The notes: a model not told the origin generated them from the sequence alone. A DNA stretch of 64,000 nt from Macrostomum lignano (GCA_002269645.1 NIVC01001226.1:62001-126000), one strand, 5' to 3'; numbered from the stretch's first letter, positions 411 through 47,850 are shown. Numbers and translations are program-made.

Positions 411-1216
411 ACAACAACAACAACAACAACAACAAAATACGCGGCCCCGCAAGCAAAGTCAGTTAGAGCAGGGCGCGTCAGATAGCGCGCCGCAGAGCCT
501 GGGAGCGAACGAAATCCGCTCCGTTGGCAGTGTCGGGCGCCCCAGCGTCGCACAGCAGGCAGTCCACGTATCGACGGGTTCGGGCCTGACCCCGCCTGAA
601 CGGGCCCTGCAAGGTGAGCAGCAGGACGTCCTGAACGGGTTGGGGCAGTAGCCCTCGGCCCAGATCACGTGGCCCGCCAGTTGGAGTCGCCGTCGGCGCA
701 GGATGGTGGACGGGCGCTGCAGCTTGGCCCGATCGTACAGGGCCTCGGTCCCGACGCTCTCGTCAGCTCGAAAGGCCGCACGGAGCAGCCCTGAGTGCGC
801 CGAGTCCAGCTGCCGCTCCAACGTAGCCGTCAGCGTCCACGTCTCGGCGTTGTAGAGCAGGACGGTTTTGACCACCGCCTGCCACAGCCGAGCCCTCTGG
901 CGGTCGGGCAGCGCTTCGGACTGGAGGACGGGTCGGATCGAACGAAAGGCCACCCAGGCAAGTCCTCTGCGCCGCCGGAGGTCTTCTTCCACGTGGGGCA
1001 CCAGACCGCCGAGGTAGGTGAACCGCTGGCAGCGTGCGAGCCTGGTCGTCTGCCCGTCTGCGCCGCGGCATGTCAGGTCTGCTGGGATGTCGGCCGGCAC
1101 AGTCAGCACCTCGGTCTTTAGCGTGTTGACAACCAGACCGACGCTCGATGCTACCTCGACCAACCTGTCGATCTGGCGTTGGGCGCCTCCAACAGACGAG
1201 GACAGGAGGGCGAGGT
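411..1216 (-). mobile_element. 5'-truncated RTE-type non-LTR retrotransposon (C-terminal RT region plus 3' tail)
   Basis: The minus strand reads (N)LALLSSSVGGAQRQIDRLVEVASSVGLVVNTLKTEV...FTYLG...LLYNAETWTLT...RRRRLQLAGHV, the post-YADD region typical of RTE-clade LINEs. A 1-nt frameshift near 640 restores ...PVQDVLLLTLQGPFRRGQARTRRYVDCL...RRAI* (TGA ~478-480). An (AAC)n/(GTT)n tail lies at 411-434. No TSD found. Confidence 0.85.
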
Positions 1217-3367
1217 TGCCAGTTTAAAGTGGTCCCGCAAAAGGGCCGTTGGACTACAATTTTCCTTACAATTTCTCATTTAAAATTTCCAATTGTGTAT
1301 TCTCACGTTTACTTGTAGTAGCGCGCAACTAATCTGTATCAATTGCTAAATCACTGCGTACTTTGTAAGCTTTGCGTACGGCTGTAGGGTCTTGCGCGAT
1401 CGATAATTTCTGTTTCTTGTTTTTCCCTCGGCAGCCAATGATAACTCTCCGCATATATTATGTTAACCCTCCTGCGCTCCTTTATTAACCCCGCCTGGCG
1501 GCGGGCTAGGGGTTTCTTCGCTTTTGTTCTGGCGTTCCTCCTTTTCCTTCTCTCTCTCCTTATCTCTCGCCACGGCTCCACTCTGTCTGGGCCAGACTGT
1601 CTGCGCGCTCTTGCTCTACTGTGTACTGCCACGGGCCGACGCCCAATCTCGCCCACTTTGTCTGTTTGCCTACTTGTTACTCACTGCCAACACTGTGCTC
1701 ACAGCCGTCACTTGCTACTCGGCTCCATCCCCATTATCATCATCTACTCAACTTAATCATCTATACGACTAAATTACATCAACCCATTGTTGCAGCCGCC
1801 AGTGCCCCATAACGTCATAAGCTTCTGTACGAATATTAAACATTGATAATTATAAACCAGTTGGCGTCGTTTGTTACGAGTATCTACCGCCATTGCCAAG
1901 TGCTACCGCTACAAACTCTACTCTGCCATTGTTGAGTTCACCATCCTTTTGGGACTAATAACGTCAGTACTCTCGTCAAACGGCGCTTTTGAGGGCTATA
2001 GCCACTGCTACGCCAATAACGTGACAGACAAAATTTTTCTGCTTTTTTGTTGGGCTATATTAAGCGTCCTGATTGTTTAACTGTGAATACAATAGCCAGA
2101 GCCGTAGATACGTAGAAGTCAAAGCAAAAACACTGCAACAGACAATCTTTTGAGCAGACAAAATTCTGCAGAATGCTTTTTAATTAGAGAAATTAATAGA
2201 AACAAAGCTCTATTCAAATTGCAGTTAATTTACTCCGGCCTATTGTTTTAAAAATTTAATCAGAATTCAATCTTTATAAAATTTTTATTAGAGATGACGG
2301 TTTGACTGAAGGTTCTTTTTTAACCTAATCCCATTTCAGAACTCTTCAGAATATCTGATCTCAGCTCAGTCGCAAATGCTACATGGGCAACATTTTTCCG
2401 AGTGCCTTTAAGTGATTTAGCAATGAAAAAAATATATTTCATTTCATTTCTGCATAGGCCTTGTTCTGCGTTTTTGCATATTGGTTAGTGTATTTGCTTT
2501 TACACTATTGATAGTAGTTATCAGTTGCGGAAGTGTCAGTAATTAGGGTAGTTTATAAATCAATAGCAGTTAGGCTCTCTGCAGGGAAGCTCTTAAGAAA
2601 ATTTAACCAAAGGCGTTAATGTAAACGGGGAATGGACCAGCATAGACATAGACAATTAGCTAATAATTGTGCGATAAGACGAGTCTTGCCCCCAAAGCAC
2701 AATTAAAGGGAAAATACTAGGATAATTTAGTGTAAGAACACCTTTTGTAAGTCGAAATTTTATTTTTGCTTTAAAAATTAAAATCTATATTTATATTGGT
2801 GTCCTGCCTCATTTCTTTAATCGCTAAATACTGGGATTAGGGAGTATCAAGAAACCTGGTGGCAGCGACCTAGCAAAATCAAACCAGTTAAATCCACTAA
2901 GAATAGTTAAGAACAATAAGGCAGTAGCCTAAACCGCAAGACCACGACTACACAAACATCATTGTTGCTTGCTGCTTCCCACGGCATGGGCCGTGTCATG
3001 AACAAGTCGCTGAATTATAATTCCGAAATAGTGTCGCTAATTAATAAACTCAAATTTGTCCTTCAATTAGCAGCCCACCTTGCTCTGAATAAAACCATAT
3101 ATTGTTTGAGAATAATTAAGTTCAAAAAGAGATTTTAAACAAACAAACAAAATTAATTAAATAAATATAATATTGTGTAACAGCTTTTTCAACTGTCTAT
3201 TCGCGATCATAAACTAGGCTCAAATAAGAAAATTAAAGAGCGAAAACTTTTTAATAACAAAGGAAGACAAAAGTTGAATGCTAAAAAACAATGAATAATA
3301 TTTTGGTTAAATGGAATATATTGTAGTTTATTTTGGTCTCAATGCAGCATATTGTCAGTTGATGTCT

Positions 3368-6188
<2,821 letters not shown>

Positions 6189-6839
6189 AAATAATATCTT
6201 TGCCACAGCTGAAAGTTCAAAGTGTGGAGTTGTGACATGTGAGTTCAAATAAAAAAAAGAAAAGATACAAAAAAGTCAGTACAGCTGTTGATGGATTAGC
6301 ATTAAGTTTTTTAATAACCATATTTGGACAAGAAACCTTTTTATGTACATTTTTGCTAAACTATACATTATAAAATATCAATAGGCCTAGTTATTATAAT
6401 TATTATGGTTATAAAACGATGGCCATGTCTCATACTTACAAAAAAATAAATTCAAGTTTAAGTTACCAGCTTGCTCTTGTTTACTGCTAGATGCTTTAGG
6501 ATAGTTGCATTGATAAACTTTATACTAAATATAGATAAGAAAGCATAGAAAAATTATAATTGCACTAAGATTCAAGCAGTGGAGCAGAGTGGTCAAAATG
6601 TATAAATATCCAGAAAAAATTCATGGGCTTGAAACTGGAAGGGAAGCACAATTGGATCTTTTTGACATAATACAAGACTGAATAAACCCATGTAAAGAAA
6701 CTATTTATTAATTCATTCTGTAATAAAGTTTAGCATAGAATTTAGCAAACTGCATAGAATGTTTTACAAATTAGAACTGTTATATACGCTTTCTTGGTAC
6801 ACCATGTTAATATATAAAGTAATCAGGAATGCAGCCTGA

Positions 6840-6975
6840 CTGTCCGTCTAGTCTGATCTGACGGATTGGCACAAAAAATGGCGCCACTGCTCAAGCAGAA
6901 GCTAAGGCCCGCTGCGCGCGATAAATATTAAAAGTACAGGATTTAACGCCAAATTATATCGTGGCGCCATTTACA
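6840..6975. promoter_or_regulatory. Putative promoter region with a perfect 12-bp inverted pair of YY1-like AAATGGCGCCAC sites
   Basis: AAATGGCGCCAC at 6876-6887 and its reverse complement at 6961-6972, in a local CpG-rich patch. It lies upstream of a minus-strand donor (GTAAGTATG, ending 6439) that would feed the AdipoR acceptor at 6209. Confidence 0.4.
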
Positions 6976-7977
6976 TTGACACTTGTTAAATGCAAAACAA
7001 AAAACTTTTGAAAAATACGCTATAACTATTAATACACAATTATTTTTTAGAAAAGTCTCCATCATATCGATGATACAATAAGTACAGCTACAGTTGTTTT
7101 ACTGTTCTACAGGTACTAATTTGATTTCATTTATTTATTGCTTTCCAAGAAGCAATTTGTGTCGAGCAATCGGCTATCCTTGAGTTTCGTTCGTTTAATT
7201 ATTTTCAGAGTTTTATATATATTTTTCCAGTAGCAGTAGTATAAAATACAAATATGAACATGTGCAAGCACCGTGTTGTTATATTATTTTTTATTGCAAA
7301 GTTGTACGACTATTTTTAATCAGTTTAGTCGCATCCCCAGCAATCTTTATTTCGTAAAGCCAGAAATACAAGCTAAAAAAAACATTTCAGACTCATATTT
7401 GTGTCCATAACTATGAAATAGCTAGTCGTAATATACAAACCTTTGATTTGATTTATTCTACTAGGTATCTCTAGGGAAAACCATTACTGGAAGGATAGAC
7501 TATGTAGCTAGCTACACTCCCCAACACCAATCATTAGGTATACCCGTGTGCTTAAATTAGCTGCAATTGCCAGGTCATGACCATGATGAATGAGTGGCAA
7601 GCTAGCACTAGCAGCTTTAATATTTTTACCTAGTTATAATAATATTTAGTCAACCCAATGCCAGAATTTTCTATATTATTGACTTAGCTATAAATCTACT
7701 AAACTGAATATTTTAAATTTAATGTGAAAGATCTAAATTATAATATAAAGGCATAGATTAATAATATAGTAATCTAAATCTCTACCCTAGAATTAGTCTT
7801 AGAATACTTTCTACAAAGCCAAAAATGTCTGCCAGGTTAGTAAAAGATTGTAGAAAACTTAAAAATATATATTTAGATAGACACCTAAATTTTGAGGTGT
7901 ATTGCATTATGACCACCTTAGTACTATCTACACTAAAGTTTTTACCTATAGTCAATAGAACATGATATACTTAATAG

Positions 7978-9057
7978 AGTATGGCACTTTTAACCCATGC
8001 TACTATTGGCATTCTTTCGTTATAGAAGACCCAAAAATGTGTGACTTTTGTAATGGAAGACCCATGAAAAAGTGGAAGAAATCAATCAAAAAACAAGCAT
8101 TCACTAACAAAATGAAAGCGTGGCAAAAGTTAATTCCACACAAAGTTGATGCTTTAATCAACAATGCTTAATTTCACACAAAGTTGTTATACTGTAATCG
8201 CAAGCGTTTATTCCACCAATCTCATACCCAGCCTGTCAAACTATAATACACTAGTGCCATGAGGTCACTGTGTATATACACTTTCGTTTTAGAAGACTGC
8301 AAAATATGAATATTTCTTATGGGTCTCGTGAAACGAAAGTAAGAAAGAAGCAGCGAGTAATTGGACCAGTTGACAGCCGCCTCACTCTCCAGTTGGTACA
8401 TCGTCATCAGCGACCTATATGGGGTAAATATGGATGAAAGATACTTGTACGAGTACAAAAGATTCAGAAATGCATGAAAGCAGCGTGCGCACGCACCCGC
8501 CTCACCTTCGAAAAAGAAGACCCAACTCATTTCACCTAAGTATTTACAACACGGAGGTCTTGCATTACAAAAGTAAGAGACCTTTATGTTAAACTTACTT
8601 GTTAAACTTGTTTCTGTTGAATTTCTAGACCACAATAGATTGCTAGTTTTTTCCATATCTCCTACTTTTGTTTTGGAAGACCTTTAATGGATGCTTAACA
8701 TTGTCGGTCTTTTAAAACAAAACTGTATATATCAGACATTCATAGAAAATGTACCCAAGGCCAACACAGGAAAAAAAATCATCTAAACCCTACATTTCTG
8801 CAGCTTTTGTTGCTGCTACCCCTACTACCTTCGTTTTCGAAGACCTTCAATGAAATAGTAGCTTGATGGTCTTCTAAAATGAAACTGTAATATAAACTGT
8901 AATAAAGGACACACAAAGCCATTAAGAATAAACAAACAAAATAATAGACAACAATATGTGAGCAGCTTCCTATGTTTTAGGTGGGTCTTCTTTTTTGAAA
9001 CTGCCAGCTTCCTATTTGATACATAGAGGGTCTTCTAAAATGAAAGAGTGCCCTACT
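7978..9057. other. Symmetric array of 12 copies of a ~19-bp motif (ACTTTYGTWWTRGAAGACC), possibly a non-autonomous DNA element
   Basis: GAAGAC cores forward at 8025, 8056, 8292, 8516, 8676 and 8839, and reverse at 8323, 8557, 8707, 8869, 8985 and 9030. Imperfect 11-bp terminal inverted repeat AGTATGGCACT (7978-7988) / AGTGCCCTACT (9047-9057). Confidence 0.65.
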
Positions 9058-9454
9058 ATTGTATAATCTATAATAAGTTTTTTGCTAGATTTTCTACACC
9101 ATGTCAAAGCTAAACCCTATTGAACTAATTAGCCCTTTTCATCTAGAAGTTTTAATTTCAGCCTTAGTATATTATAGAAAATATAGTATACCATATATTA
9201 GCATAGTATATGAATATAGACATTTTAGTATAAATAATTGTAACACAGCATAGAAGTGCTACTATTTAGTGATAATGCAAGGCAATATACTACTAGTATA
9301 AAAAGTCTAGCATAAGTAATATTAGTATATCATGGTATATCTAAAATTTATAGCTGTCTAGTGTACATCTATAGGTTCTTTAAATTCTCCTAATGCAGAT
9401 TTTTGAAAATTATTTTAATAAGAAAGCTGAAATTTGAAACTGCACTAGTTAGCC

Positions 9455-10070
9455 CCCATGAGCCTAAGCATCTTAGCAACTTCCCCATGAGCCTTGGCAT
9501 CTCAGCAATTCCCCCAATGGGCCTTGAAATCTTAGCAATTCCCCCATGAGCCTTGGCATCTGAGCAATTCCCCCATGAGCCTTGGTATCCCAGCAATTCC
9601 CCCATGAGCCTTGGCATCTCAGCAATTCCCTCAATGGGCCTTGAAATCTTAGCAATTCCCCCATGAGCCTTGGCATCTCAAGAATTCCCTCATGAGCCTT
9701 GGTATCTCAGCAATTCCCCCATGAGCCTTGGCATCTCAGTAATTCTCCCATGAGCCTTGAAATCTCGGCAATTCCAATAAGCTTTGGCAATTTGGCGTCC
9801 CAGCAATTCCCCCATGAGCCTTGGCATCTCAGAAATTCCCCCATGAGCCTTGAAATCTCAGCAATTCCCCCATGAGCCTTGGCAATTTGGCATCTCAGCA
9901 ATTCCCCCCCCCCATGAGCCTTGGCAATTTGGCATCTCAGCAATCCCCCCCCATGAGCCTTGGCGTCTCAGCAATTCCCCCATGAGCCTTGGCATCTCAG
10001 CAATTTCCCCATGAGCCTTGGCATCTCAGCAATTTCCCCATGAGCCTTGGCATCTCAGCGATTCCCCCAT
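9455..10070. repeat. 29-nt minisatellite (CAGCAATTCCCCCATGAGCCTTGGCATCT)
   Basis: Roughly 20 visible units; explains the ORFs at 9390-9943. Confidence 0.95.
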
Positions 10071-10448: not shown

Positions 10449-19850
<9,402 letters not shown>

Positions 19851-23587: not shown

Positions 23588-30902
<7,315 letters not shown>

Positions 30903-31019
30903 ATTATCTGGGAAATGGCTGAATGTGAGCGCATTTGGATGCTTATTGGTTAGTTGCTAATCGGCAAATCAGAGGCGATGAGATCTGCCTGCAACTTGAA
31001 GCTTCTGTGGGAAAAGCGC

Positions 31020-34866: not shown

Positions 34867-35040
34867 TATGGGTATTTTGTTGTACTTTTTATTTGCAACT
34901 CAGTTTGTCATAAATTACCATAGACTAATTTCCTTTTACAGTTCTTTCTCGTAGTTAAGTTTCTCGCCCCAAGCCCTCTCGTCTTTAACTCATAAAATAT
35001 ATTGCAATTCAAATCTAAGTTAAGTTGTAGTTTCACTACA
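34867..35040 (+). repeat. 5' LTR (174 bp)
   Basis: Base-by-base identical to 39409-39582 on manual comparison. Confidence 0.93.
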
Positions 35041-35105
35041 AATTGGTCCGGTGAGGCGGCGAAAGATATTACTCGCATACTCAATACTAACAGAAGACAA
35101 ATCCA

Positions 35106-36011
35106 ATGACGGACAGTGCAAGCAACAATTCCGCTCCTACACCACCTACAACCACGCAAGCCGCACCAAGTTCGGCCGCACCAGTGGTTACAACTGCAGT
35201 AGGAAACGCCGCCGACACCGCTATAGTCTCCCTGGCCCACCTGAAGCTGCCAATCTTCTATCGCAACAACCCGGAAGCATGGTTCCTCACGCTGGAGGCC
35301 CAGTTTATGCTCAACAGGGTGACCAACGAGACCGCCAAATTTTACCACCTAGTCTCTCATCTACCGGAGGATATCGCGGCTCTGCACTTGTCCGCTCAGA
35401 CTCCAAAACAGTACGAACAACTGAAATCAGCGATTACATCGACTCTGCAAAAGTCCAAGCAGGAGAAGGTTTCGGAAGTATTGCAAGTCTCGGACCTCGG
35501 AGGAGACAAGCCATCAATCTTCATGCGCAAACTCCGGAGCAAGATGGAGCAGTGCCAGATACAGCCCGACGAGGAACTCCTCAAGGCCACTCTGATGCGC
35601 TGTCTTCCACAGGACCTTCGTATCGCACTGTCGGGATTCCAACAGCAGTCATCCCAGCAAATTTCCGAGATTGCTGACTCGATGTTGGTCGTCAGAGGCC
35701 TTAGCTCTCCACCGCCAGCGACAGTTTGCCCAATTCAGCAGGCCGGTGCAGATCGGACACCCCAACAGCGCTTTGAGCAAGCTCCACACCGACAAGCACC
35801 TGGTAAGCCCACTGGAACAGACCCATTTAAGCCTGGCCAACGCCCCGTCGTTTGCCGCTCACACCTCTACTATGGCCGCCGTGCTCGGTCGTGTCGCCCG
35901 TGGTGCCAGTTTCCCAAGGACAGCTCGCGTCCGATCCGAGTGCTGCATCCCAATGAAAAAACGCCATCTCAGTCGCGTTCATCATCACCTTCTCGACAGC
36001 CGGAAAACTAA
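35106..36011 (+). CDS. gag: Retrotransposon Gag (301 aa)
   Basis: [22 protein letters not shown]...[11 protein letters not shown]-terminal motif and a C-H-C-C knuckle variant, [18 protein letters not shown], typical of CsRN1-like elements. Confidence 0.9.
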
Positions 36012-39000
36012 ATCGCACTGCGACCGAGGTCGCGGTGCGCAGTGCCGAGATACCATCGACCACCTGTTTGGAGTTAGATGTTAAAATCAACAATACCTAC
36101 AGCAAGTTTCTTGTGGATACCGGAGCCTCGGTTTCCATTGTTCCACCTCACCTCGTTAACGCACTCGTTCAAGATACAAACGTTCGTTTAATTACTGCTA
36201 CCGGAGCCGCCATACCAGTTCGCGGGTCGGTCCTACTGGATGTCTCAATCCGCGGTTTGCGTCGCGCCTTCCAGTGGACCTTCCTCGTGGCGTCAGTGGT
36301 GAAACCCATAATTGGTTACGATTTCTTGGCTCACCATGGGTTAGTTGTCGATTGTCAGCGCAAACACGTTCGAGACTCAGAAACAGGACTGTCTACTGTT
36401 ACCTTGTCAATTTCAAATGTTCATTGTGGCCCATTCACTGTGTCGGTAGAACTGCCACCCAACCTGGATTCTCGGACGAGTACGCTGTTGACAAAGTTTG
36501 CAGATTGTTTTTCTTTCGTTGAAGGCGGAGCCCTTCCGCCAGCTTCAGAGGTCAAGCATGACACTGTTCACCGGCTAGACACTGGTAGTGGACAACCAAT
36601 TCACTTGCGACCCCGGCAACTGCACCCTGCAAAACTACAGGCTGCAAAGCAGGAGTTTCAGCAGCTAATCGATGCTGGCTACCTCAGACCTTCCTCAAGC
36701 GCTTGGGCGTCACCCCTCCACATGGCACCCAAGGGAGCTGGCTGGCGTCCGTGCGGTGACTATCGCGAATTGAACAAACGAACAAAGCCGGACAACTATC
36801 CGGTTCCACACATTCAAACATTCACTCGGTACCTACACGGAAGCACTGTGTTTTCAAAGTTAGACCTTGTTCGCGCCTTTCATCAAATTCCAGTCGCCGA
36901 AGAGGATATTTGCAAAACCGCTATCACCACACCGTTTGGATTGTTCGAGTACACACGCATGCCCTTCGGCCTGAGGAATGCAGCACAAACATTTCAACGC
37001 TTCATCGACTCTGTTTTTCACGGACTGTCATTCGTCATCTCTTACATCGATGATGTCCTGATATTCTCAAAGACTCGTGAGGACCACTACTCGCATTTGG
37101 AACAAGTTTTGGACCGCCTATGAACACACGGCCTACAGGTTCATTTGAAGAAGTGCGAATTCTTTCAGTCCGAGGTAGATTTCCTTGGCCATCGCGTGAC
37201 TCCTGAAGGAATAAAACCTCTCCAGAAGAAGATCCAAATAATCACTGACTGGCCGACACCCATGGATTCGAATGCACTTCGGCGCTTCCTCGGTGTCGTC
37301 GGTTTCTACCGTCGATTCGTTCCCAACTTTGCCGACCGCATCTGTCCGCTGCAAGACCTACTCACTGCATCACTACAGTCAGCAGGAAACTTCCAATGGA
37401 CAGAGCAGCATCAGAAATCTTTCGAAAACATCAAACAAGCTCTCTCAGAGAGACTACTGCTGCATCATCCGGACCCCAACTGTACTGCGTACCACCTGTA
37501 CACTGATGCCTCAGCCGACTGTGTTGGTGCCGTTCTTCATCAATTCTCTTCAACCGGAACGTCACCTCTTGGCATGTTCAGCAAGAAGTTGTCGTCATCT
37601 CAAAGGATGTACAGCACGTTCGACCGAGAACTACTCGCGGCGTACCTGGCAGTGTTGCACTTCCGCAGCCTCATTGAAGGACTGAGCGTGACCTTGTTCA
37701 CCGATCATAAACCACTAGCTCAGGCCTTCCACGCCAATCGCACCACTACGTCAGATCGCAATCAGCGCTACTTGACCGTCTTGTCCGAGTACGTGGCAGA
37801 TGTCCAGTACATTCGCGGTGCAGACAACGTAATAGCTGATGCCCTTTCTCGACTGCCTGACTTCCCAGTGAATGATCACGTGTCCAACATCGCAACAGTC
37901 GCTGTAGTCGCTGCCCCATCAAGCCAATTCCCTGTTGATCTGCCCAGTATCGCTGAAGCACAACGACCGGAGTCGTTCTCAGCTGCACCAAATATTCGAT
38001 CGTATTCTCTGGACAAAGACGTCGTCGTTTGGTGTGAGACGTCAACGCCGTATCCTCGCCCGATCATTCCGCCGTCCCTCCGCGACGCCGTGATTGCCTC
38101 CTTCCATCGACTTGGTCATTTCGGCTACCGTAAAACAGCAAAACTCATCACAGAACGTTACTTTTGGCCCGGAATGCGCAAGTCCATCAAGACCTACTGC
38201 TGGAACTGCCAGGACTGCCAACGGAGTAAAGTCACTCGCCACACTGTCTCCCCGCAACAGGCCTTCGCACTACCATCAAATCGCTTTGAGGCGGTACACA
38301 TTGATATTGTGGGACCACTTCCACCAGCTAATGCTACCACCTTTGGCCACCAGTCTGCCCGCTACCTTCTCACGATGGTCGACCGCTCGACTGGCTGGCT
38401 AGAAGCTACACCACTGGAATCAATAACCGCGGAAGTAGTCGCCCATGCATTCGTCTCATCTTGGGTCTCGCGCTACGGAGTGCCACTGTATGTAATCACT
38501 GATCGGGGGCGCCAGTTCGAATCAGAATTCTTTCACTCGGTCTCGTCATCAATTGGTTTTCATCGATTACGCACAACGGCCTACCACCCTCAAACCAATG
38601 GCAAGGTCGAGCGAGCCCATCGCACCCTGAAGACGATGCTACGTGCTCGAGGCAATGACTGGCTGACAGACCTACCTGTGGCTCTCCTCGCGATGCACGT
38701 CGCACCTGACGACCAAGGAATATCACCGTTCACCAGGGTTACGGGCGAGCTTCCGATGGTTCCGCGCATTCTAACTTCTGAACCACTCGCCCCAACGGAC
38801 ATTCGGACACGGCTGCAGGAACTGCTGACAGAGTTACCGAGTCCACACGCGAAGACGCACGAACCACGGAGCTACGTACCCAAGGACCTGGAAATGGCTG
38901 AATTCGTCTGGGTTCGGGTCGATCGCGTGCGGTCGCCGCTCGAGGCGCCGTACTCAGGGCCGTATCGCGTGAAACAGCGAACTGACAAGTTCTTCGTTAT

Positions 39001-39214
39001 TTTCCTACCGTCAGGCAACACCGAATCTGTCTCTATCGATCGCCTCAAGCCGGCGCGACTTTCGCTTCCGAAGTCGGCTGTTCAGCCGGCCGCGAACTCG
39101 CTGCCGGAAAAAGCCGCCAAACCAAAGGAACCGGTGGACTCATCACCTCCTAGAGCGACCTCTAGCGGCCGCCGAGTCCAATTCCGACGCCATAATGATT
39201 ACATTTATTATTAA
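36002..39214 (+). CDS. pol: Retrotransposon Pol (PR-RT-RNaseH-IN) in the -1 frame, interrupted by an in-frame TGA at 37121-37123
   Basis: PR: [12 protein letters not shown]: [36 protein letters not shown]: LYTDAS, ELLA, TDHKPL, ADALSR. IN: H..GH...[29 protein letters not shown]. ORFs 36035-37123 and 37145-39214 are in the same frame. Confidence 0.92.
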
Positions 39215-41199: not shown

Positions 41200-41889
41200 G
41201 GAATTAGAATAGGGGCCTAGGACCCAACCTTTATGGGACCTCTATAAGACCTCTGAATCTAATGCCAATGGGCTTTAGGTAGGCCTCTCAAGTCTAAATA
41301 AATCTTTGATACTAGGCCTAGGCTACCATTCAGTTTGGCAACAAGACATTTTGGTGATAGACACTGGTAACAAGATGTTTCAGCAAAAATTTTAGGCCAT
41401 TTTAGCAAATCTTATTGTTATAACTAATTTTTAGACTTCAACTTGGACTTGGACTATCCTGAACTAGGCCTAATGTATTTTTGGTATTTTCTAATTTACA
41501 GACTCAGACTACTTATTTATAGACTAGTCTATAATAAAACTTGAAATTTAACATGTTAAAATCAATAAACAGTCCTAAATAGGATATTGGTCTTGAATTC
41601 CAGTGTATTTCGATGACACGGAAAATGGTGACTTTGGCAACAAGCAATGTTAAATTTGGCAAAAAGTTTCTCTTTCACTTTCACAAATCAGTTTCTATGG
41701 CTATTTATTTAGTCTTTTTATTATATTCTTACTAACATAAACAATGCGTCTATATCCTATCGTAACTGTCTACAGCCTATGAAATACTTTCCCTTTTTGT
41801 TAAATGTAATGAACACGTGTGTTTTAACAAGCAATCCTATGACATGCTGATTGTTTGTTGGGATAAGAAGCTTTGATAAACATGCTTGG

Positions 41890-42045
41890 GCGCAACCTTG
41901 GGATTTACTCGGCTATTTCTATTGGCAACACACACACATAAGTTGCTATTGGATGTAGTAGTAGTCACGTGACTGCTCTCAGCCAATAGTGACTTACATG
42001 TGTGTGTTGCCAATAGAAATAGCCAGGTGATTCCCAAAGTTGCGC
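41890..42045. mobile_element. 156-bp palindromic (foldback) MITE
   Basis: GCGCAACCTTGGGATTTACTCGGCTATTTCTATTGGCAACACACAC... pairs with ...GTGTGTTGCCAATAGAAATAGCCAGGTGATTCCCAAAGTTGCGC. A right-half copy lies at 56399-56481. Confidence 0.8.
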
Positions 42046-42479
42046 ATATATGTTTGATAAATATCCACACTCTGACTTTGTACCCACCAACTTGAAGAGC
42101 ACAACCAAGTATGTGAGTGAGCCCCATCACCAAGGCGGCTTCGTCACAGTATGATCAGCAACTCCAATCCTATGAAAAACATTTGCATGTACTGTGGTTT
42201 TTATGTCTATTGAATCGAAATTTCAATTTTATCATATAGCTATATCTTAAGTACCATGCATGCAAATACAAATGTTTCATGTAATTTGTTGTAAAATGTA
42301 GTACATGACTGTACCACAAAGCTAAAATTCACAAAGTTAAAATGCTCAACATTAAGACATGACTGTGTGGAGATAGACACACATCAAAAGAGTGTAGTCT
42401 CAGTTTTGAAAGGAAAAGTTAGCATAAGATTCACATCAAAAAGAACAAACAGCATTGCATTATGTTAAAAGCATTAAAG

Positions 42480-44025
42480 GGCATTTAGCCATGGAACTTT
42501 TAGCCGATTACAGGCTTCCAGCAGTGCCTCCTCAGATTGTAGTCCTTCAGAAAATTCTTGCCAAAGCTTTTGTGACAAGGGGGGCATCCAGAATGGCCTG
42601 ACAAGCTTTATCATGCAGGAGTTGGGTTAGCAAGTAAAACTGCAAGTCGTTCCTCTGTGCTCTGCTGTTAAGCTGGTGGTGCCAGCCTTCAAGGTCATTA
42701 TTTGTTCTAATCGGCTGCTTTTAGACTTAGAGGCACTCTGGTCTCCATAGCGAGCTGTTAATCCACGTGACCTAGCGTGCAAGAATAAAAAATGGCCCTT
42801 TTAAGAGTGCAAGAGAATATGAAGGCACAAGACGCAACCAATTTGCTCCACAATATCCATTTGCACCTACTTGGATGTAGTTAGCAAACAATGCTAATAG
42901 AGGCTTATCATGACAATCAATACTTGCACAAAAAATGTAAAAGCCATGCTCAATTAGGTTCACTGGCAGAAATGGAAACACCATGAACTTCCTACAGACC
43001 CGCTGTGTTTCAATGTTGTTCACATACTCGCCTTGCAGGCCAATTTGTTGAACGTTGCGCCATAATGCTTGAGTATAGTGGAACAGGCAGCCTATAAAGT
43101 CGGCCTCAGGAAAGGCTGCTCTAAGAGCCTGCCACACTGCAGCCTCAAAGTCAAGCAGAAATCAAGTGGGCCTGTGGTGAAAATGATATAATTTTTTCTA
43201 TTGGTTCTGTAATCCCATATCTACATGCATATCCGCATATACCTTGCAAGCGCAATGAGTTCCTTGATAGCGTTTAATACAGGGGGGGCATAGCCCAGCG
43301 GTAGCGCAGCTGCTCTGGTGTGCCGCAACCCAGGCTCAATTCCAAGTGCAGCCACATTAATTTGGGGCTGAATTGGAATTTCGGCTTGGCTCGCTTGTGC
43401 AATTAACGGCCTTAAGAGCCAACCCCCCAAGGTGCAATGAAGTGTATATGCCTAACAATTGATAAAGTTAGGGCCGCTATACACTCCTGTGTGAGTGTGT
43501 GCCTGCGTAATGTATCTGCACGCTTGTATGCCTCCTCAGGGGAGTCGGCAAAATGGGCAGTAATGCCTCTCGCCGGTTGTGTGCCAATGTCGCTTAAAGT
43601 GCGCCAGGGTGCACACAACCCCCCTGCCTCTAATAAAAAATAGCGTTGAATATGGCTGCATAGTCACTTTGCTGCTTTCTAGTCATTAGTGCAAAGAACA
43701 CCAGCACCTGCTTCAGCGCATCGTCTGGTCCAATAATGAATATGTGAATTGAGAAGAGCTGGACAAACAGGTGACGCACCACCTTGAAAGTGCCGTCCAT
43801 GTACCAGGTAGTCGCGATAGACAGAAGGTCCAGCTGGCTGTCCAGTGCAAACAAAATAATGCAGTTCTCCTCAGAACAAATGTCCGCTTTTAGGAATCCT
43901 GGTGCAATGAAAGTGTCACACAACTCGAAATCTGCACTCTGTGGTTCAGGTGCCCTATTGTGGCGTCGGCTGCGATTGGCACTGGGCCAACTTCTTGGGA
44001 ACCGGAATTGATGGCGCACTCTGTA
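42480..44025 (-). pseudogene. MULE (DDE) transposase pseudogene
   Basis: SANRSRR...PEPQSADFEL...WYMDGTFKVV..LFVQLFSIH...K..SDY (D1); DFEAAVWQAL...GCLFHYTQALWR (D2 plus CxxH); YIQ|VTWINS...IRTNNDLEGWHH (E). Contains stops, frameshifts and insertions, plus a GT-AG intron at 42870-42772. Confidence 0.85.
43283..43353 (+). mobile_element. tRNA-like Pol III head (SINE remnant) within the ~440-bp insertion interrupting the MULE
   Basis: A-box TAGCCCAGCGGTAG and B-box-like GGCTCAATTCC; no convincing full cloverleaf. Confidence 0.45.
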
Positions 44026-44037
44026 GACAATGCGCAA

Positions 44038-44338
44038 CAGCAGAGTACAATAGAGTACGCTGTCAGTTTGCAAGAGCAGCATCAGATAGCGCGCTTCAAA
44101 GCTTAGGCGCAAACAAAGGCCACACCGCCGGCAGAGTCTGGGGTGCCAGCGTCAGCCAGCAGACAGTCGATGTAGTGCCGAGTCCTTGCCTGTCCCTGCC
44201 AGTAGGATGCCTGCAACGTAAGTAGCAGCACCTCCTGTACCGGCTCTAGACAGTAGGCCTCAGCGCGGATGACGTGGCCTGCCAGCTAGAGTTGCCGACG
44301 TCGCAGCAGATCGCTAGGACAGGCCAGGCCGGCGCAAT
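44038..44338 (-). mobile_element. RTE-type LINE 3' fragment (301 bp) with 12-bp TSD
   Basis: The minus strand encodes RRQL*LAGHVIRAEAYCLEPVQEVLLLTLQ..., ending GCGCGCTATCTGA like the copy at 411-1216. It is flanked by GACAATGCGCAA at 44026-44037 and 44339-44350. Confidence 0.88.
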
Positions 44339-47300
44339 GACAATGCGCAATTGATAGCAATAAGCCTAAATTAGTCTCTTTCTACTGTTCTGTATTGTCT
44401 GTACTTAAAAAGAATCCTATAGCCTATTGTCAAGACTATTACATGGTGGGTAGTACTGTACATTATAGCCCATTGCCGATGTAACAAATTGCACGGATTG
44501 AGTTAGAACACTCTTTGAAACACACAGTTGTACTTAGACAATAAGCATTGTTGACAAAACATACTTGTCGCCATATTTAACATAGCTTGTTGCCAAAGTC
44601 ACAATTTTTCATGTTGCCAAAATCAACTATTGCCAAAAAGCCTGGCACCCATTGGTCCTATATCTAATATAATATAGGATATTGGATATAAGTAGGGCCT
44701 ATGATAGATAAGATAGGTAATGTTATTCATTGTCATAAATCAATATATAGACATAGTATAGGCCTAGATTTTACATAGGCCCTCTATAAGTAATATGTCT
44801 AAATAGATTAATAGAGTCATAAAAACTATATAATGATCCTATGGCTATAAGCCTAGGCCCTTATTGATATATTAATCTAGTCTAAGCCTAGTCTGATCTA
44901 GGTATATTAATAGTAAAAATATATAATATATATTTAATAATAATAAAAACTGTATTAATAACTAAAAAAGTAAGACAAGGCCTAAAAGTAAGATAACAAT
45001 AAATTAAACAATATTTATCAATGTCAACTTTTCTTTTAAAAGCCTATATAGTTTTGCTCATTAAATTATTTTTGTTAAAAATAATAATTGTTAAGCCATA
45101 GTCTGGATCATGTTGGTTGCACATCTAAACAAAAATCCAATAATTATAAATGCATGCCAAAAAATAGAGTGCATATCCATTCTCATAACTATGCTAGTGT
45201 TGCAACAATAAATGACCTTTACATTGTGAAAGTAAATTACTTTTTTAAATTGCATAATGGACCCTTTTTAGCAAATAATTTGGTTAATTTTTATGCTTTT
45301 TCGATAATACTAGGCCTATTCACAGTAAAAAATCAATACATGCAAAGATTAGTTTAACTGTTTTTTATAAGCTTTAAAAACCCTAAAAGCCTAAAATTTA
45401 CGCTTAAAAATGAACGTAAACATTAACAATGTACTTTTTTTCTATTTTACAATAACTCTTTTGCATGATTCTATGAAGTGCATGCCAGGTATGTATGCAT
45501 ACTATTTTCTTAAGAGTGATGCATGCCAATTGTGCATGCCTACTTTTGGTATGCAAGGCCAATGCACATCTAAATTTTTGGGCCTAGAGGTAAAAGGTAA
45601 AATGGATAAAGGGTAATAAGGAATCAACTATTTAGTTTTGTTAGTCTACAATGGATAATAATGTGACACCCAATAGAAGTTCCCAAAGGTCTTGTTTGGG
45701 AAGGGGCACCAGTAAAAATAGGGCCTAACTCCTGTAGGTGTGACTGGCATAGAAAATGATAATAGAATGGTTGTAATATGCACATTTAAACAAAAGTAGT
45801 TACTTAATAATATGTTACATTTGTTCCTTATTCTTTATTCTACTATTTCTTAAGCCTAAAGTTACTTAAAAGTTTATTATTCTTAACAAAAATAATTTAA
45901 CATGCAAAACTACAAGATAGTCAGCTAGGCCTAGGCCTATAATAAAGTTTTAACTAACTAATGGTAAACCAAACTCCAGATCAATGCGATCATGTGATAT
46001 ATCCTTGGCCTTAAATCTATTAGCCCTGTATGCCAAAAGCTAGGTATACACAATTGGCATGCATTACTTCTAAGAAAAAAAATATATATGCATACAGTAT
46101 ACCTAGTGTGCACTTTATAAAATCATGCAAAAGAGTTAATTTTAAGTAGAAAAAAGATTGAAAACTTCATTTTTAAGCATTAAATTCAAGTTTTCTAGTT
46201 TTTTAATCTTATTATAAGGCATTAAAACTAATGTTTGTATATATTGATTTTCTGCTATAAATATTGTAATATAGGCAAGAAAGGAAAGTAATGAACGAAA
46301 ATAATAAGTCAAGCAAATGACCCTCTTAATATAGTCTATCTTGTTTTGCAATGAAGGTGATACAAGATCTCTAAAACCAAGATCTCTAAAGCTTGTTTCT
46401 CCAAAACACAGACATCCTAGGTAGATGCCTGTGGGCTTGTGATAGGTCAAACAAGTCAGAGTAATTGTATTCTATAAAACTAGTAAACAACAATATGAGG
46501 AGTAAGCAATGTATATAGGCGAGTATATTGTTAGTTTATAATCTCATAGCACATAATACAATATACTATATACCATATATAACTTTATATCAATATAGTA
46601 TCTTATATTATATGCTATAACATTTTTCAGCCAGAAATTTCCAAGAAGACTTATTACCTTTGTATTGAAATTTAATATTTTTTAGGGATTCATTCATTTT
46701 GTTTGCTATTAGTTTGTTGGCTAAAATACGAAATAACTTTTTAGTAGTGCAATTTATGCAATTTATGCAATTTAAATCTGTAATTATTAACTTTGGAATT
46801 AACTAATCTAATAAGTTAGTATTTTATTATTAATAATATTTGGTAGATTGCCATCCCTGATATTAATTAGTAGTAAGAAAAGCAACTTGATCATTATTTG
46901 CTATATCAAAGGCACTAGTGTACATGTATATATATATACAATTTATAACAGAAATATAATAAAAAATTATTTGTATTATTATATAACTAATGTATTTTCA
47001 AAAAAAATATTTTAAAAATGGATTTTTTTGAAAATTGTATATGGGTCTTGAAAATACTTTCAGACAATACTTTTAAAAATGTTGTATTGCTCACTATTCA
47101 CATTCATCTTAACAAAAGTAGTATTAATTTTTTAATTTTACTATACATTTTTTCTTTTCTATTTTCTAATTGCACTAAACAACCTGCATTGAACACTACA
47201 CAGCCTATGTTATGCTACAATATTGTGCTATGCCATATGTGCCAATATATTAACTTTAGAAAGCTTCTGTCCATTGGAATTTTCTAGACAAAAAGAATTC

Positions 47301-47850
47301 ATTCTAAGTGTAGAGTGTGCACTACGACTATATACCAAATGCAGTAGGGACCCTTTGTGTATACCAGAATTTTGTTTGGCAAAGGCGATTTTCATTTTAG
47401 CTATAAGTTTTATATTGCTATACAATGCAATACAAGTTCTGCAATACAAGTACAATGCAATACAACAGGAAGTGAAACATAGCTACTGACTGATACTACT
47501 TAATAGTAGTATTAAAGTAATACTCGCTCTGAAATTTCTTTGTTTTGTTGAATCTTTAAAATTCCTAATTTTGAGCAACTCGTGCTAAAATTAGTCCAGT
47601 TAAGCTCTAGACAATTTTGTCTGCAATGTGAAATGCAAATTAATTATTAATGTAGGCATATAAAATGTCTCCATTTCTTATAAATTTCTTTAGAGTGTCT
47701 TATCAAAATATTTTGAGCATGGCACCTTCAACATTATCCCACGATTAAAGTTTCACAGGGAGGAAATTGGCAGACTAGTTTTATCAAGAAAATCTCAATA
47801 GACTTCAATTCCAGCATTCAACTTTCCTATCTTAACTTCTGCAGACAGTT

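What the first reader, a model, noticed from the sequence alone, without database searches (positions are those of the whole stretch)
7978..9057. Symmetric 12-site lattice of a 19-bp motif: >> (><)(><)(><)(><) <<
Seen: motif ACTTTYGTWWTRGAAGACC occurs six times per strand in a mirror-symmetric layout. There are two direct copies on the left (cores 8025, 8056; 31 bp apart). Four convergent pairs follow, with unique spacers of 25, 35, 25 and 24 nt between cores (8292/8323, 8516/8557, 8676/8707, 8839/8869), then two reverse copies on the right (8985, 9030). The block is bracketed by an imperfect 11-bp inverted repeat, AGTATGGCACT/AGTGCCCTACT. Spacers differ in sequence but keep their length (25, or 25+10, about one helical turn). 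It is neither a tandem repeat nor coding, because the motif is on both strands. Inference: a binding scaffold for a dimeric protein, such as transposase subterminal sites of an undescribed DNA element or a recombinase/architectural site, or a series of hairpins/cruciforms. It sits between divergently transcribed AdipoR and RhoGAP.
Basis: partly seen in the sequence, partly recalled or inferred. Interest (0 to 1): 0.75.

Follow-up and report, generated by a model that had tools for sequence, protein, structure and literature searches.

The report
Small DNA transposon with twelve binding-site copies
The striking 12-site motif lattice is real, but it is the inside of a 1,045-bp non-coding "cut-and-paste" DNA transposon that inserted between two animal genes, so it is an unusual-looking member of an ordinary class of mobile DNA rather than a new kind of genomic device.

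Summary
Exactly 12 copies of a bipartite 19-bp motif (ACTTTYG-N5-GAAGACC) lie in 8013-9047, in the order + + (+-)(+-)(+-)(+-) - -. About 0.1 would be expected by chance, and there is no comparable copy elsewhere in the 64 kb.

The new finding is that the block has transposon ends. A 25-bp imperfect terminal inverted repeat (8008-8032 / 9028-9052, 22/25, both tips 5'-GGCAY) is flanked by a perfect 8-bp direct repeat, CTACTATT (8000-8007 and 9053-9060). This is a target-site duplication: none of 1000 control placements gave a direct repeat of 7 bp or more. GC content steps from 26% in both flanks to 37% inside. The 19-mer occupies positions 6-24 of each terminal repeat, so the ten inner copies are reiterated end-core sites, most likely transposase-binding sites.

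The element has no coding capacity. GG tips, a 25-bp terminal repeat and an 8-bp duplication match the published hallmarks of the Merlin superfamily. MULE, hAT or P relatives cannot be excluded without the transposase.

The paired sites show no covariation and no strand bias in G·U pairs. Their stems are too short for canonical miRNA precursors, so selection has acted on the DNA sites rather than on RNA hairpins.

Its bracketing inverted repeat and its coordinates are off.

The parts
8000..8007 (.). Left copy of the 8-bp target-site duplication, CTACTATT
   Evidence: It is identical to 9053-9060 and directly abuts the tip of the terminal repeat. None of 1000 control placements gave a direct repeat of 7 bp or more.
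8008..9052 (.). The whole element: a 1,045-bp non-autonomous terminal-inverted-repeat DNA transposon
   Evidence: It is bounded by the terminal repeats and the target-site duplication. GC is 36.7%, against 26.3% and 25.7% in the 300-bp flanks. The only long ORF (8222-8656, minus strand) has no Pfam match and no homologue.
8008..8032 (+). Left terminal inverted repeat, GGCATTCTTTCGTTATAGAAGACCC. It contains motif site 1 at 8013-8031.
   Evidence: It is 22/25 complementary to 9028-9052.
8044..8062 (+). Motif site 2, a direct subterminal copy 31 bp from site 1
   Evidence: 0 mismatches; 25.7 bits.
8130..8186 (+). A second, unrelated internal repeat: TTAATTYCACACAAAGTTG twice, 38 bp apart, with a partial third copy near 8207
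   Evidence: families D13 and D15.
8280..8340 (.). Inverted pair P1 (sites 3 and 4, 23-nt spacer)
   Evidence: I19. As RNA it folds at -19.8 kcal/mol, z = -2.8.
8504..8574 (.). Inverted pair P2 (sites 5 and 6, 33-nt spacer). It is the most degenerate pair.
   Evidence: The arms are 13/19 identical to each other. The plus strand forms no stable hairpin.
8664..8724 (.). Inverted pair P3 (sites 7 and 8, 23-nt spacer)
   Evidence: I10. It folds at -23.3 kcal/mol, z = -5.0. It is 76% identical to P4 over 74 bp.
8827..8886 (.). Inverted pair P4 (sites 9 and 10, 22-nt spacer)
   Evidence: I12. It folds at -20.3 kcal/mol, z = -5.0.
8984..9002 (-). Motif site 11, a direct subterminal copy 45 bp from site 12. 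It belongs to a roughly 45-bp tandem duplication of the right end and carries its own GGCA-like tip.
   Evidence: D2; 21.2 bits.
9028..9052 (-). Right terminal inverted repeat. Its reverse complement reads GGCACTCTTTCATTTTAGAAGACCC. It contains motif site 12 at 9029-9047.
   Evidence: (I2).
9053..9060 (.). Right copy of the 8-bp target-site duplication, CTACTATT

Best explanation
The lattice is the body of a single insertion of a non-autonomous 'cut-and-paste' (class II, terminal-inverted-repeat) DNA transposon, 1,045 bp long (8008-9052). It landed in an AT-rich intergenic tract between the AdipoR-like and RhoGAP genes and duplicated the 8-bp target CTACTATT.

Shown:
- the 25-bp terminal inverted repeats with 5'-GGCAY tips
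- the target-site duplication
- the compositional step at both junctions
- the 19-bp bipartite motif (ACTTTYG-N5-GAAGACC) at positions 6-24 of each terminal repeat
- ten more copies of that motif inside the element, with unrelated DNA between them

Inferred: the 19-mer is the recognition site of the family's transposase, supplied in trans. The 5-bp tip is where cleavage occurs. The inner copies are reiterated end-core ('subterminal') sites that load extra transposase. The four inward-facing pairs, spaced 4-5 helical turns apart, would put two bound molecules on one face of the DNA. That could aid cooperative binding or synapsis, or simply reflect repeated local duplication of end sequences.

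By its ends (GG tips, 25-bp repeat, 8-bp duplication) the element fits the Merlin superfamily best. That assignment stays provisional without a transposase.
For: - Ends: a scan of 314 x 353 candidate boundaries found 51 with at least 10/12 terminal complementarity. Only 8008/9052 also has an 8-bp flanking direct repeat.
- Control for the duplication: the same scan at 1000 random placements in this window never gave a direct repeat of 7 bp or more. In these particular flanks two random positions share an 8-mer with probability 1e-4.
- Composition: GC is 26.3% and 25.7% in the two flanks and 36.7% inside.
- Motif in the ends: the terminal motif copies are 17/19 identical to each other.
- Conservation: it drops to near-random level immediately outside the 19-mer. 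Inside, two invariant blocks are separated by about one helical turn, as expected for a bipartite protein-binding site.
- No RNA-level signal: partner arms are no more similar than non-partners (14.75 versus 13.98 +/- 1.67 of 19). G·U pairs number 5 on each strand.
- No coding capacity.
- Literature: Merlin elements have terminal repeats of 24-462 bp with a conserved terminal 5'-GG and 8- or 9-bp duplications (PMC8101967). Merlin and IS1016 both make 8-bp duplications (PMC10045372). Subterminal repeats are transposase-binding motifs found in both orientations, 5 to more than 50 times (PMC3355664).
Against: - Only one copy could be examined. No second copy, empty site or autonomous partner could be sought, because the source genome is not in any searchable collection.
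- The terminal repeats differ at 3 of 25 positions.
- The flanking repeat could also be read as 9 bp (CTACTATTG), which would leave the left tip one G short.
- The 8-mer CTACTATT occurs once more, 200 bp to the right (9259), so the flank is somewhat repetitive.
- A 19-bp reiterated site is longer than the 5-12 bp usually described for subterminal repeats (PMC3355664).
- Internal inverted pairs spread over the whole element are not a described Merlin feature.
- No Merlin, hAT or P transposase domain was found among 40 ORFs of the window.
Confidence: 0.78

Rival explanations
1. A host cis-regulatory or architectural array: a homotypic cluster of sites for a host DNA-binding protein (for example a multi-zinc-finger, IRF-like or SMAD-like factor). 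It would act as a shared enhancer, bidirectional promoter or insulator for the divergent AdipoR and RhoGAP genes. It may have been exapted from the transposon.
For: - It lies between divergently oriented genes.
- The site is bipartite, with invariant blocks and random flanks.
- The pairs are spaced at 4-5 helical turns.
- Part of the motif resembles an IRF/ISRE core (AAAAYGAAAGT), and the invariant AGAC resembles a SMAD box. Both resemblances are recalled from memory and were not tested.
Against: - The block has transposon ends and a target-site duplication, which fully explain why it is there.
- The motif is part of the terminal repeats themselves.
- The motif's CpG has decayed to TG or CA in 7 of 12 copies, as expected for unconstrained copies.
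- No further site occurs anywhere else in the 64 kb.
- A more conventional CpG-rich promoter-like stretch lies at about 6820-6980.
Confidence: 0.1
2. A cluster of structured small-RNA genes (miRNA-like, short-hairpin or endo-siRNA hairpins). Each inward-facing pair would be transcribed and would fold into a hairpin that is processed.
For: Three of the four pairs fold into hairpins more stable than shuffled controls: -19.8, -23.3 and -20.3 kcal/mol, with z from -2.8 to -5.0. Transposon-derived hairpins are a known source of small RNAs (established knowledge).
Against: - The stems are only 17-24 bp, with no lower stem beyond the motif. That is too short for canonical Drosha substrates (established knowledge).
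- Pair 2 does not fold on the plus strand.
- Four of the 12 sites have no partner.
- Partner arms show no covariation, and the two strands have equal numbers of G·U pairs.
- There is no Rfam match at gathering thresholds, and only chance-level matches at E up to 10.
Confidence: 0.06
3. A transposon, but of another superfamily with duplications of about 8 bp (a Mutator-like element, hAT, P, or an undescribed superfamily) rather than Merlin.
For: - hAT also makes 8-bp duplications (PMC3355664). The MuDR/IS256 group is reported to make 4-10-bp duplications (PMC10045372).
- The duplication here can be read as 9 bp, the usual MULE length (established knowledge).
- The window contains a decayed MULE, so that superfamily is present in this genome.
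- Many reiterated subterminal sites in both orientations are classic for hAT and CACTA elements.
Against: - The tips are GG, not the CA/TA-type tips usual for hAT and P (established knowledge).
- The terminal repeat is short for a typical MULE.
- The resident MULE's 73-bp terminal repeats are unrelated.
- The three structural hallmarks together match the published Merlin definition.
Confidence: 0.35

Closest known systems
Merlin superfamily DNA transposons (related to bacterial IS1016/IS1595) and their non-autonomous derivatives
   Same: It has terminal inverted repeats of at least 24 bp that begin with 5'-GG, an 8-bp target-site duplication, and an animal host (PMC8101967).
   Different: No transposase can be tied to it. 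The twelvefold reiteration of the end core and the four internal inverted pairs are not described features of Merlin elements in the papers read.
Subterminal repeat regions of hAT (Ac/Ds, TCUP) and CACTA (En/Spm) elements
   Same: Many copies of a short transposase-binding motif lie inside the ends, in both orientations. They include inverted dimers in En/Spm (from memory) and 39 CGGCAC/CACGGC repeats in TCUP (PMC3355664). hAT also shares the 8-bp duplication.
   Different: The motif here is 19 bp and bipartite rather than 5-12 bp. It is the core of the terminal repeat itself. It is spread over the whole element rather than confined to the last 200-300 bp. The tips are GG rather than CA/TA or CACTA.
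IR/DR ends of Tc1-like elements such as Sleeping Beauty (from memory)
   Same: Each end carries two direct copies of a transposase-binding site of about 20-30 bp. The outer copy lies a few bases from the tip. This resembles sites 1-2 and 11-12 here.
   Different: Those elements duplicate TA, not 8 bp. Their tips are CAGT-type. They have no internal inverted pairs.
Foldback elements
   Same: The orientation of reiterated motifs is mirror-symmetric overall, and the whole element can fold back on itself.
   Different: There is no long-arm homology. Only the 19-mers, plus about 74 bp between pairs 3 and 4, are similar. The repeats are not tandem sub-repeats filling long arms.

Membership tests
Class II terminal-inverted-repeat DNA transposon (non-autonomous) | Terminal inverted repeats at both ends | tested here: met
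   8008-8032 and 9028-9052 are 22/25 complementary.
Class II terminal-inverted-repeat DNA transposon (non-autonomous) | A direct target-site duplication that directly abuts both ends | tested here: met
   CTACTATT occurs at 8000-8007 and at 9053-9060. None of 1000 control placements gave a direct repeat of 7 bp or more. The flank-specific chance is 1e-4 per position pair.
Class II terminal-inverted-repeat DNA transposon (non-autonomous) | No transposase gene of its own | tested here: met
   The element is 1,045 bp. Its only long ORF (8222-8656, minus strand) has no Pfam match and no homologue.
Class II terminal-inverted-repeat DNA transposon (non-autonomous) | Multiple dispersed copies in the genome, and empty sites | not testable with these tools
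   The source genome is not in any searchable collection. There is no second copy in the 64-kb window. Metagenome and viral scans gave only single chance hits.
Merlin superfamily | 8- or 9-bp target-site duplication | tested here: met
   It is 8 bp, or 9 bp if the ambiguous G is counted. The criterion comes from PMC8101967 and PMC10045372.
Merlin superfamily | Terminal inverted repeats of 24-462 bp with a conserved terminal 5'-GG | tested here: met
   The repeat is 25 bp, and both tips read GGCAY. The criterion comes from PMC8101967.
Merlin superfamily | Mobilised by a DDE_Tnp_IS1595-type transposase | not testable with these tools
   The element is non-coding. No such domain was reported among 40 ORFs of the window (that output lists 25 of the 28 matched families). 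The rest of the genome is unavailable.
hAT superfamily | 8-bp target-site duplication | tested here: met
   The criterion comes from PMC3355664.
hAT superfamily | Short terminal repeats with CA/TA-type tips (5'-YARNG; established knowledge, from memory) | tested here: not met
   The tips are GGCAT and GGCAC.
Mutator-like elements (MULE) | Target-site duplication usually 9-11 bp, and often long terminal repeats of 100 bp or more (established knowledge). The reported range is 4-10 bp (PMC10045372). | tested here: inconclusive
   The duplication is 8 or 9 bp and the terminal repeat is only 25 bp. The decayed MULE in the window (41602-44628) has unrelated 73-bp terminal repeats.
Animal miRNA cluster | A hairpin of about 33-35 bp including a lower stem, a transcribed-strand bias, and arms that covary | tested here: not met
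   The stems are 17-24 bp with no lower stem. There is no within-pair excess of identity, and G·U pairs number 5 versus 5 on the two strands. There is no Rfam family match.
Foldback transposon | Long inverted arms built of tandem sub-repeats | tested here: not met
   Self-BLAST finds only the 19-25-bp sites and one 74-bp unit as similar. There is no arm-length homology.
Satellite / tandem repeat | Head-to-tail units of constant period | tested here: not met
   Tandem Repeats Finder reports no array across the block. The DNA between sites is unrelated.

The most novel reading that the evidence does not exclude
The element may represent an undescribed transposon family, or a sub-lineage of Merlin or a new superfamily, with a distinctive binding mode. 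Its transposase would bind a long bipartite 19-bp site as a dimer across inward-facing site pairs set 4 or 5 helical turns apart. The four internal pairs would then be functional: end-mimics that nucleate or regulate the synaptic complex, or hairpin sources of silencing small RNAs. They would not be mere duplication debris. A host factor could also have captured the array as a regulatory module for the two flanking genes.
Probability: 0.15. Interest if true: 0.55.

Novelty: new member of a known kind. Interest (0 to 1): 0.3.

Why it matters
It turns an eye-catching 'lattice' into an annotated mobile element with exact ends. That keeps it from being mistaken for a regulatory module, an RNA gene cluster or a new class of element. 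It also supplies a concrete query (25-bp ends, 19-bp site, 8-bp duplication) for finding the family and its transposase in the source genome.

If the internal inverted pairs prove functional, the element would be a compact natural substrate. It could be used to study how reiterated, helically phased binding sites organise a transposase complex in a poorly studied superfamily.

Tried and rejected
- **Known RNA families.** Rfam found nothing at gathering thresholds over the whole window. At E up to 10 over 7800-9300 it gave only chance-level hits. ARAGORN found no tRNA.
- **Relatives elsewhere.**
  - Three protein searches returned only a Macrostomum lignano protein and unnamed metagenome fragments. 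The query from inside the lattice (the ORF at 8222-8656) found nothing.
  - Two exact-protein look-ups failed.
  - Motif scans of metagenome and viral contigs gave 82 loci (80 is the per-scan listing limit) with no cluster of sites.
  - Full-text searches for motif and end k-mers found nothing relevant.
- **Spliced-leader gene, alternative first exon or splice-site reading.** Read outward, several copies end in AAAG|GTAAGA-like donors. Read inward, they resemble pyrimidine-tract/AG acceptors. The downstream sequences are not conserved, there is no Sm site, and the signal outside the 19-mer is 0.74 bits or less. Rejected.
- **Small-RNA promoter (PSE or Ruby-motif-like), heat-shock element, STAT site or CENP-B box.** These were resemblances from memory only. 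The spacings or invariant positions do not fit. Not pursued.
- **Coding repeat.** One frame reads F-[RC]-x-x-R-P in several copies, but half the copies lie on the other strand and there are no homologues. Rejected.
- **Each inverted pair as a nested miniature element.** The pairs have no GGCA tips and no flanking duplications. Rejected.
- **Simple mirror duplication of two halves.** The similarity relations among copies are reticulate, and there is no arm-length homology. Rejected.
- **Link to the MULE relic or to the foldback-like repeat at 45-46 kb.** Their ends are unrelated.

Full report
**Observation.** The 19-bp motif ACTTTYGTWWTRGAAGACC is real and local.
- Allowing 3 mismatches, it occurs 11 times in 8013-9047 and once, weakly, elsewhere (45542). 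Shuffles give 0.11 on average, and none of 100 reaches 12.
- The twelfth site (8984-9002) has 4 mismatches.
- A PWM built from the 12 sites, which makes this check circular, scores them 21-27 bits. The next best position in the 64 kb scores 16 bits.
- The order is + + (+-)(+-)(+-)(+-) - -.
- The spacers between 19-mers are 23, 33, 23 and 22 nt, which gives 42, 52, 42 and 41 bp start to start. The direct copies are 31 bp and 45 bp apart.
- Tandem Repeats Finder sees no array across the block. Self-BLAST shows that the DNA between sites is unrelated, except that pairs 3 and 4 share a 74-bp unit at 76% identity.
- Pfam confirms the neighbours. HlyIII/AdipoR exons lie on the minus strand at 3411-5576, and RhoGAP exons lie on the plus strand at 12690-19850.

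**Anatomy of the site.** I aligned all 12 copies in one orientation. Mean pairwise identity is 0.2-0.4 at almost every flanking position and 0.5-1.0 at positions 1-19. T4, T5, A15, G16, A17 and C18 are invariant. The motif is therefore bipartite: ACTTTYG, then 5 variable bases, then GAAGACC. The two blocks are about one helical turn apart, which is the pattern expected for a protein-binding site. The CpG at positions 6-7 has decayed to TG or CA in 7 copies.

**The key result: the block has transposon ends.**
- I scanned all boundary pairs (314 on the left by 353 on the right) for terminal complementarity of at least 10/12. That gave 51 candidates. Only one of them, 8008/9052, also has a long flanking direct repeat.
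- The ends are GGCATTCTTTCGTTATAGAAGACCC (8008-8032) and, on the other strand, GGCACTCTTTCATTTTAGAAGACCC (9052-9028). They match at 22 of 25 positions.
- They are directly flanked by CTACTATT at 8000-8007 and again at 9053-9060.
- The same scan at 1000 random placements in this window never gave a direct repeat of 7 bp or more.
- The local flanks are rich in TAGTA-like words. Even so, two random positions in them share an 8-mer with probability only 1e-4.
- GC content is 26.3% and 25.7% in the 300 bp on either side and 36.7% inside. This fits a foreign segment inserted into a uniform AT-rich tract.
- The element is thus 1,045 bp long. Its only long ORF has no Pfam match and no homologue, so it is non-autonomous.

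**How the lattice fits the transposon.** The 19-mer occupies positions 6-24 of each terminal repeat, and the two terminal copies are 17/19 identical. The other ten copies are therefore reiterations of the end core.
- Each end carries a second copy in direct orientation. On the right this belongs to a roughly 45-bp tandem duplication that even repeats a GGCA-like tip.
- The interior carries four inward-facing pairs. Each pair looks like a left-end core facing a right-end core.

The inference is as follows. The transposase of this family, encoded elsewhere, recognises the 19-mer. The GGCAY tip is the cleavage region. The inner copies recruit additional transposase. This is what the literature describes for subterminal repeats: binding motifs in both orientations, present 5 to more than 50 times (PMC3355664). 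The spacing of the pairs at about 4 and 5 helical turns would place two bound proteins on one face of the DNA. That fits cooperative or dimeric binding, but nothing here tests it.

**DNA site or RNA hairpin?**
- Three of the four pairs fold better than shuffled controls: -19.8, -23.3 and -20.3 kcal/mol, with z from -2.8 to -5.0. Pair 2 does not fold on the plus strand.
- The stems are 17-24 bp, with no pairing beyond the motif. By established knowledge that is too short for a canonical animal pri-miRNA.
- Partner arms are no more alike than non-partners (14.75 versus 13.98 +/- 1.67 identical positions of 19). G·U pairs are equally frequent on both strands, 5 versus 5.
- Rfam gives nothing.
- Selection has therefore acted on each 19-mer as a sequence, not on base pairing.

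**Superfamily.** Published definitions state that Merlin elements have terminal repeats of 24-462 bp with a conserved terminal 5'-GG and 8- or 9-bp duplications (PMC8101967). Merlin and its bacterial relatives (IS1016) both make 8-bp duplications (PMC10045372). This element meets all three structural criteria.
- hAT shares the 8-bp duplication but usually has CA/TA-type tips (from memory).
- The MuDR/IS256 group makes 4-10-bp duplications and often has long terminal repeats.
- The flanking repeat here can also be read as 9 bp.
- No Merlin, hAT or P transposase domain turned up among 40 ORFs of the window. The decayed MULE at 41.6-44.6 kb has unrelated 73-bp ends.

I therefore call the element Merlin-like by its ends, at roughly 0.4 probability. 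The broader call, a terminal-inverted-repeat DNA transposon, I hold at about 0.8.

The proposed bracket AGTATGGCACT/AGTGCCCTACT is not the terminal repeat. Its right arm is the last six bases of the element plus five bases of the duplication. Its left arm (7978-7988) lies 20 bp outside the element. The stretch 7983-7996 (GGCACTTTTAACCC) looks like a collapsed end sequence, but with two gaps it could be chance.

**What could not be done.** The source genome is not in any collection I could search.
- The only named relative of any window protein is from the flatworm Macrostomum lignano, at 62% identity over 37% of one exon. The organism is an invertebrate animal and possibly a flatworm, but that is not established.
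- Exact-protein look-ups failed.
- Motif scans of metagenomes and viral contigs gave only isolated chance hits.
- Copy number, other insertions, empty sites and the autonomous partner all remain untested. These are the decisive next steps.

**Verdict.** It is a new member of a known kind. The internal arrangement is unusual and tidy, and worth a note for transposon specialists, but it is not a new class of genomic feature.

Noticed in passing
window 7983-7996: GGCACTTTTAACCC lies 12 bp left of the target-site duplication. It reads like the element's end sequence (GGCACTCTTTCATTTTAGAAGACCC) with two internal deletions. It could be a relic or footprint of an earlier insertion of the same family, or chance.
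   Followed up: partly
window 8130-8216: Inside the element there is a second, unrelated repeat. TTAATTYCACACAAAGTTG occurs at 8130 and 8168 (95% identical, 38 bp apart), with a partial third copy near 8207. CACACAAAG recurs at about 8911.
   Followed up: no
window ~5590-5800: A tRNA-derived SINE-like sequence lies just upstream of the first AdipoR coding exon. It has a B-box-like GGTTCGATTCTCGAACC, followed by ...CAGTTCACCCAGCTGTAAAATGGGTGCC.... ARAGORN does not call it a tRNA.
   Followed up: partly
window ~6820-6980: A CpG-rich island sits in otherwise AT-rich DNA. It carries an inverted pair AAAATGGCGCCAC / GTGGCGCCATTT about 85 bp apart. This is a more conventional candidate for the AdipoR-side core promoter than the lattice.
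   Followed up: no
window 9453-10070: A 29-bp minisatellite (CCCCCATGAGCCTTGGCATCTCAGCAATT, about 20 copies, 80% matches) lies 400 bp to the right of the element.
   Followed up: no
window 13800-15150, 15630-16750, 17250-18430: Long micro- and minisatellite arrays lie between the RhoGAP exons. They include (TCTG/TCTGTC)n-type repeats that read as CLSV.../TDRQ... in translation. They create long spurious ORFs.
   Followed up: no
window 35000-39211 (+): A Gypsy-type LTR retrotransposon coding region: DUF7041 gag-like, aspartyl protease, RVT_1, RNase H, integrase zinc finger and rve domains. A separate decayed ORF that looked like a reverse-transcriptase fragment lies at 462-1223 (-), with only a weak sub-threshold DUF6451 match.
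   Followed up: partly
window 41602-44628: A decayed Mutator-like element. It has 73-bp terminal inverted repeats (41602-41674 / 44556-44628, 78%) and two ORF fragments with weak, sub-threshold MULE transposase-domain matches. Its ends are unrelated to the lattice element.
   Followed up: partly
window 45049-46263: A foldback-like structure with several long inverted-repeat blocks (for example 45436-45547 versus 46036-46155, 84%). It contains the single weak 3-mismatch motif match at 45542, which appears to be coincidental.
   Followed up: partly
window 47836-59100 (+) and 29886-30956 (-): A multi-exon SPT6 gene (acidic N-terminus, HTH_44, YqgF, HHH, S1 and SH2 domains) and a single-exon rhodopsin-type 7TM receptor ORF.
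   Followed up: no
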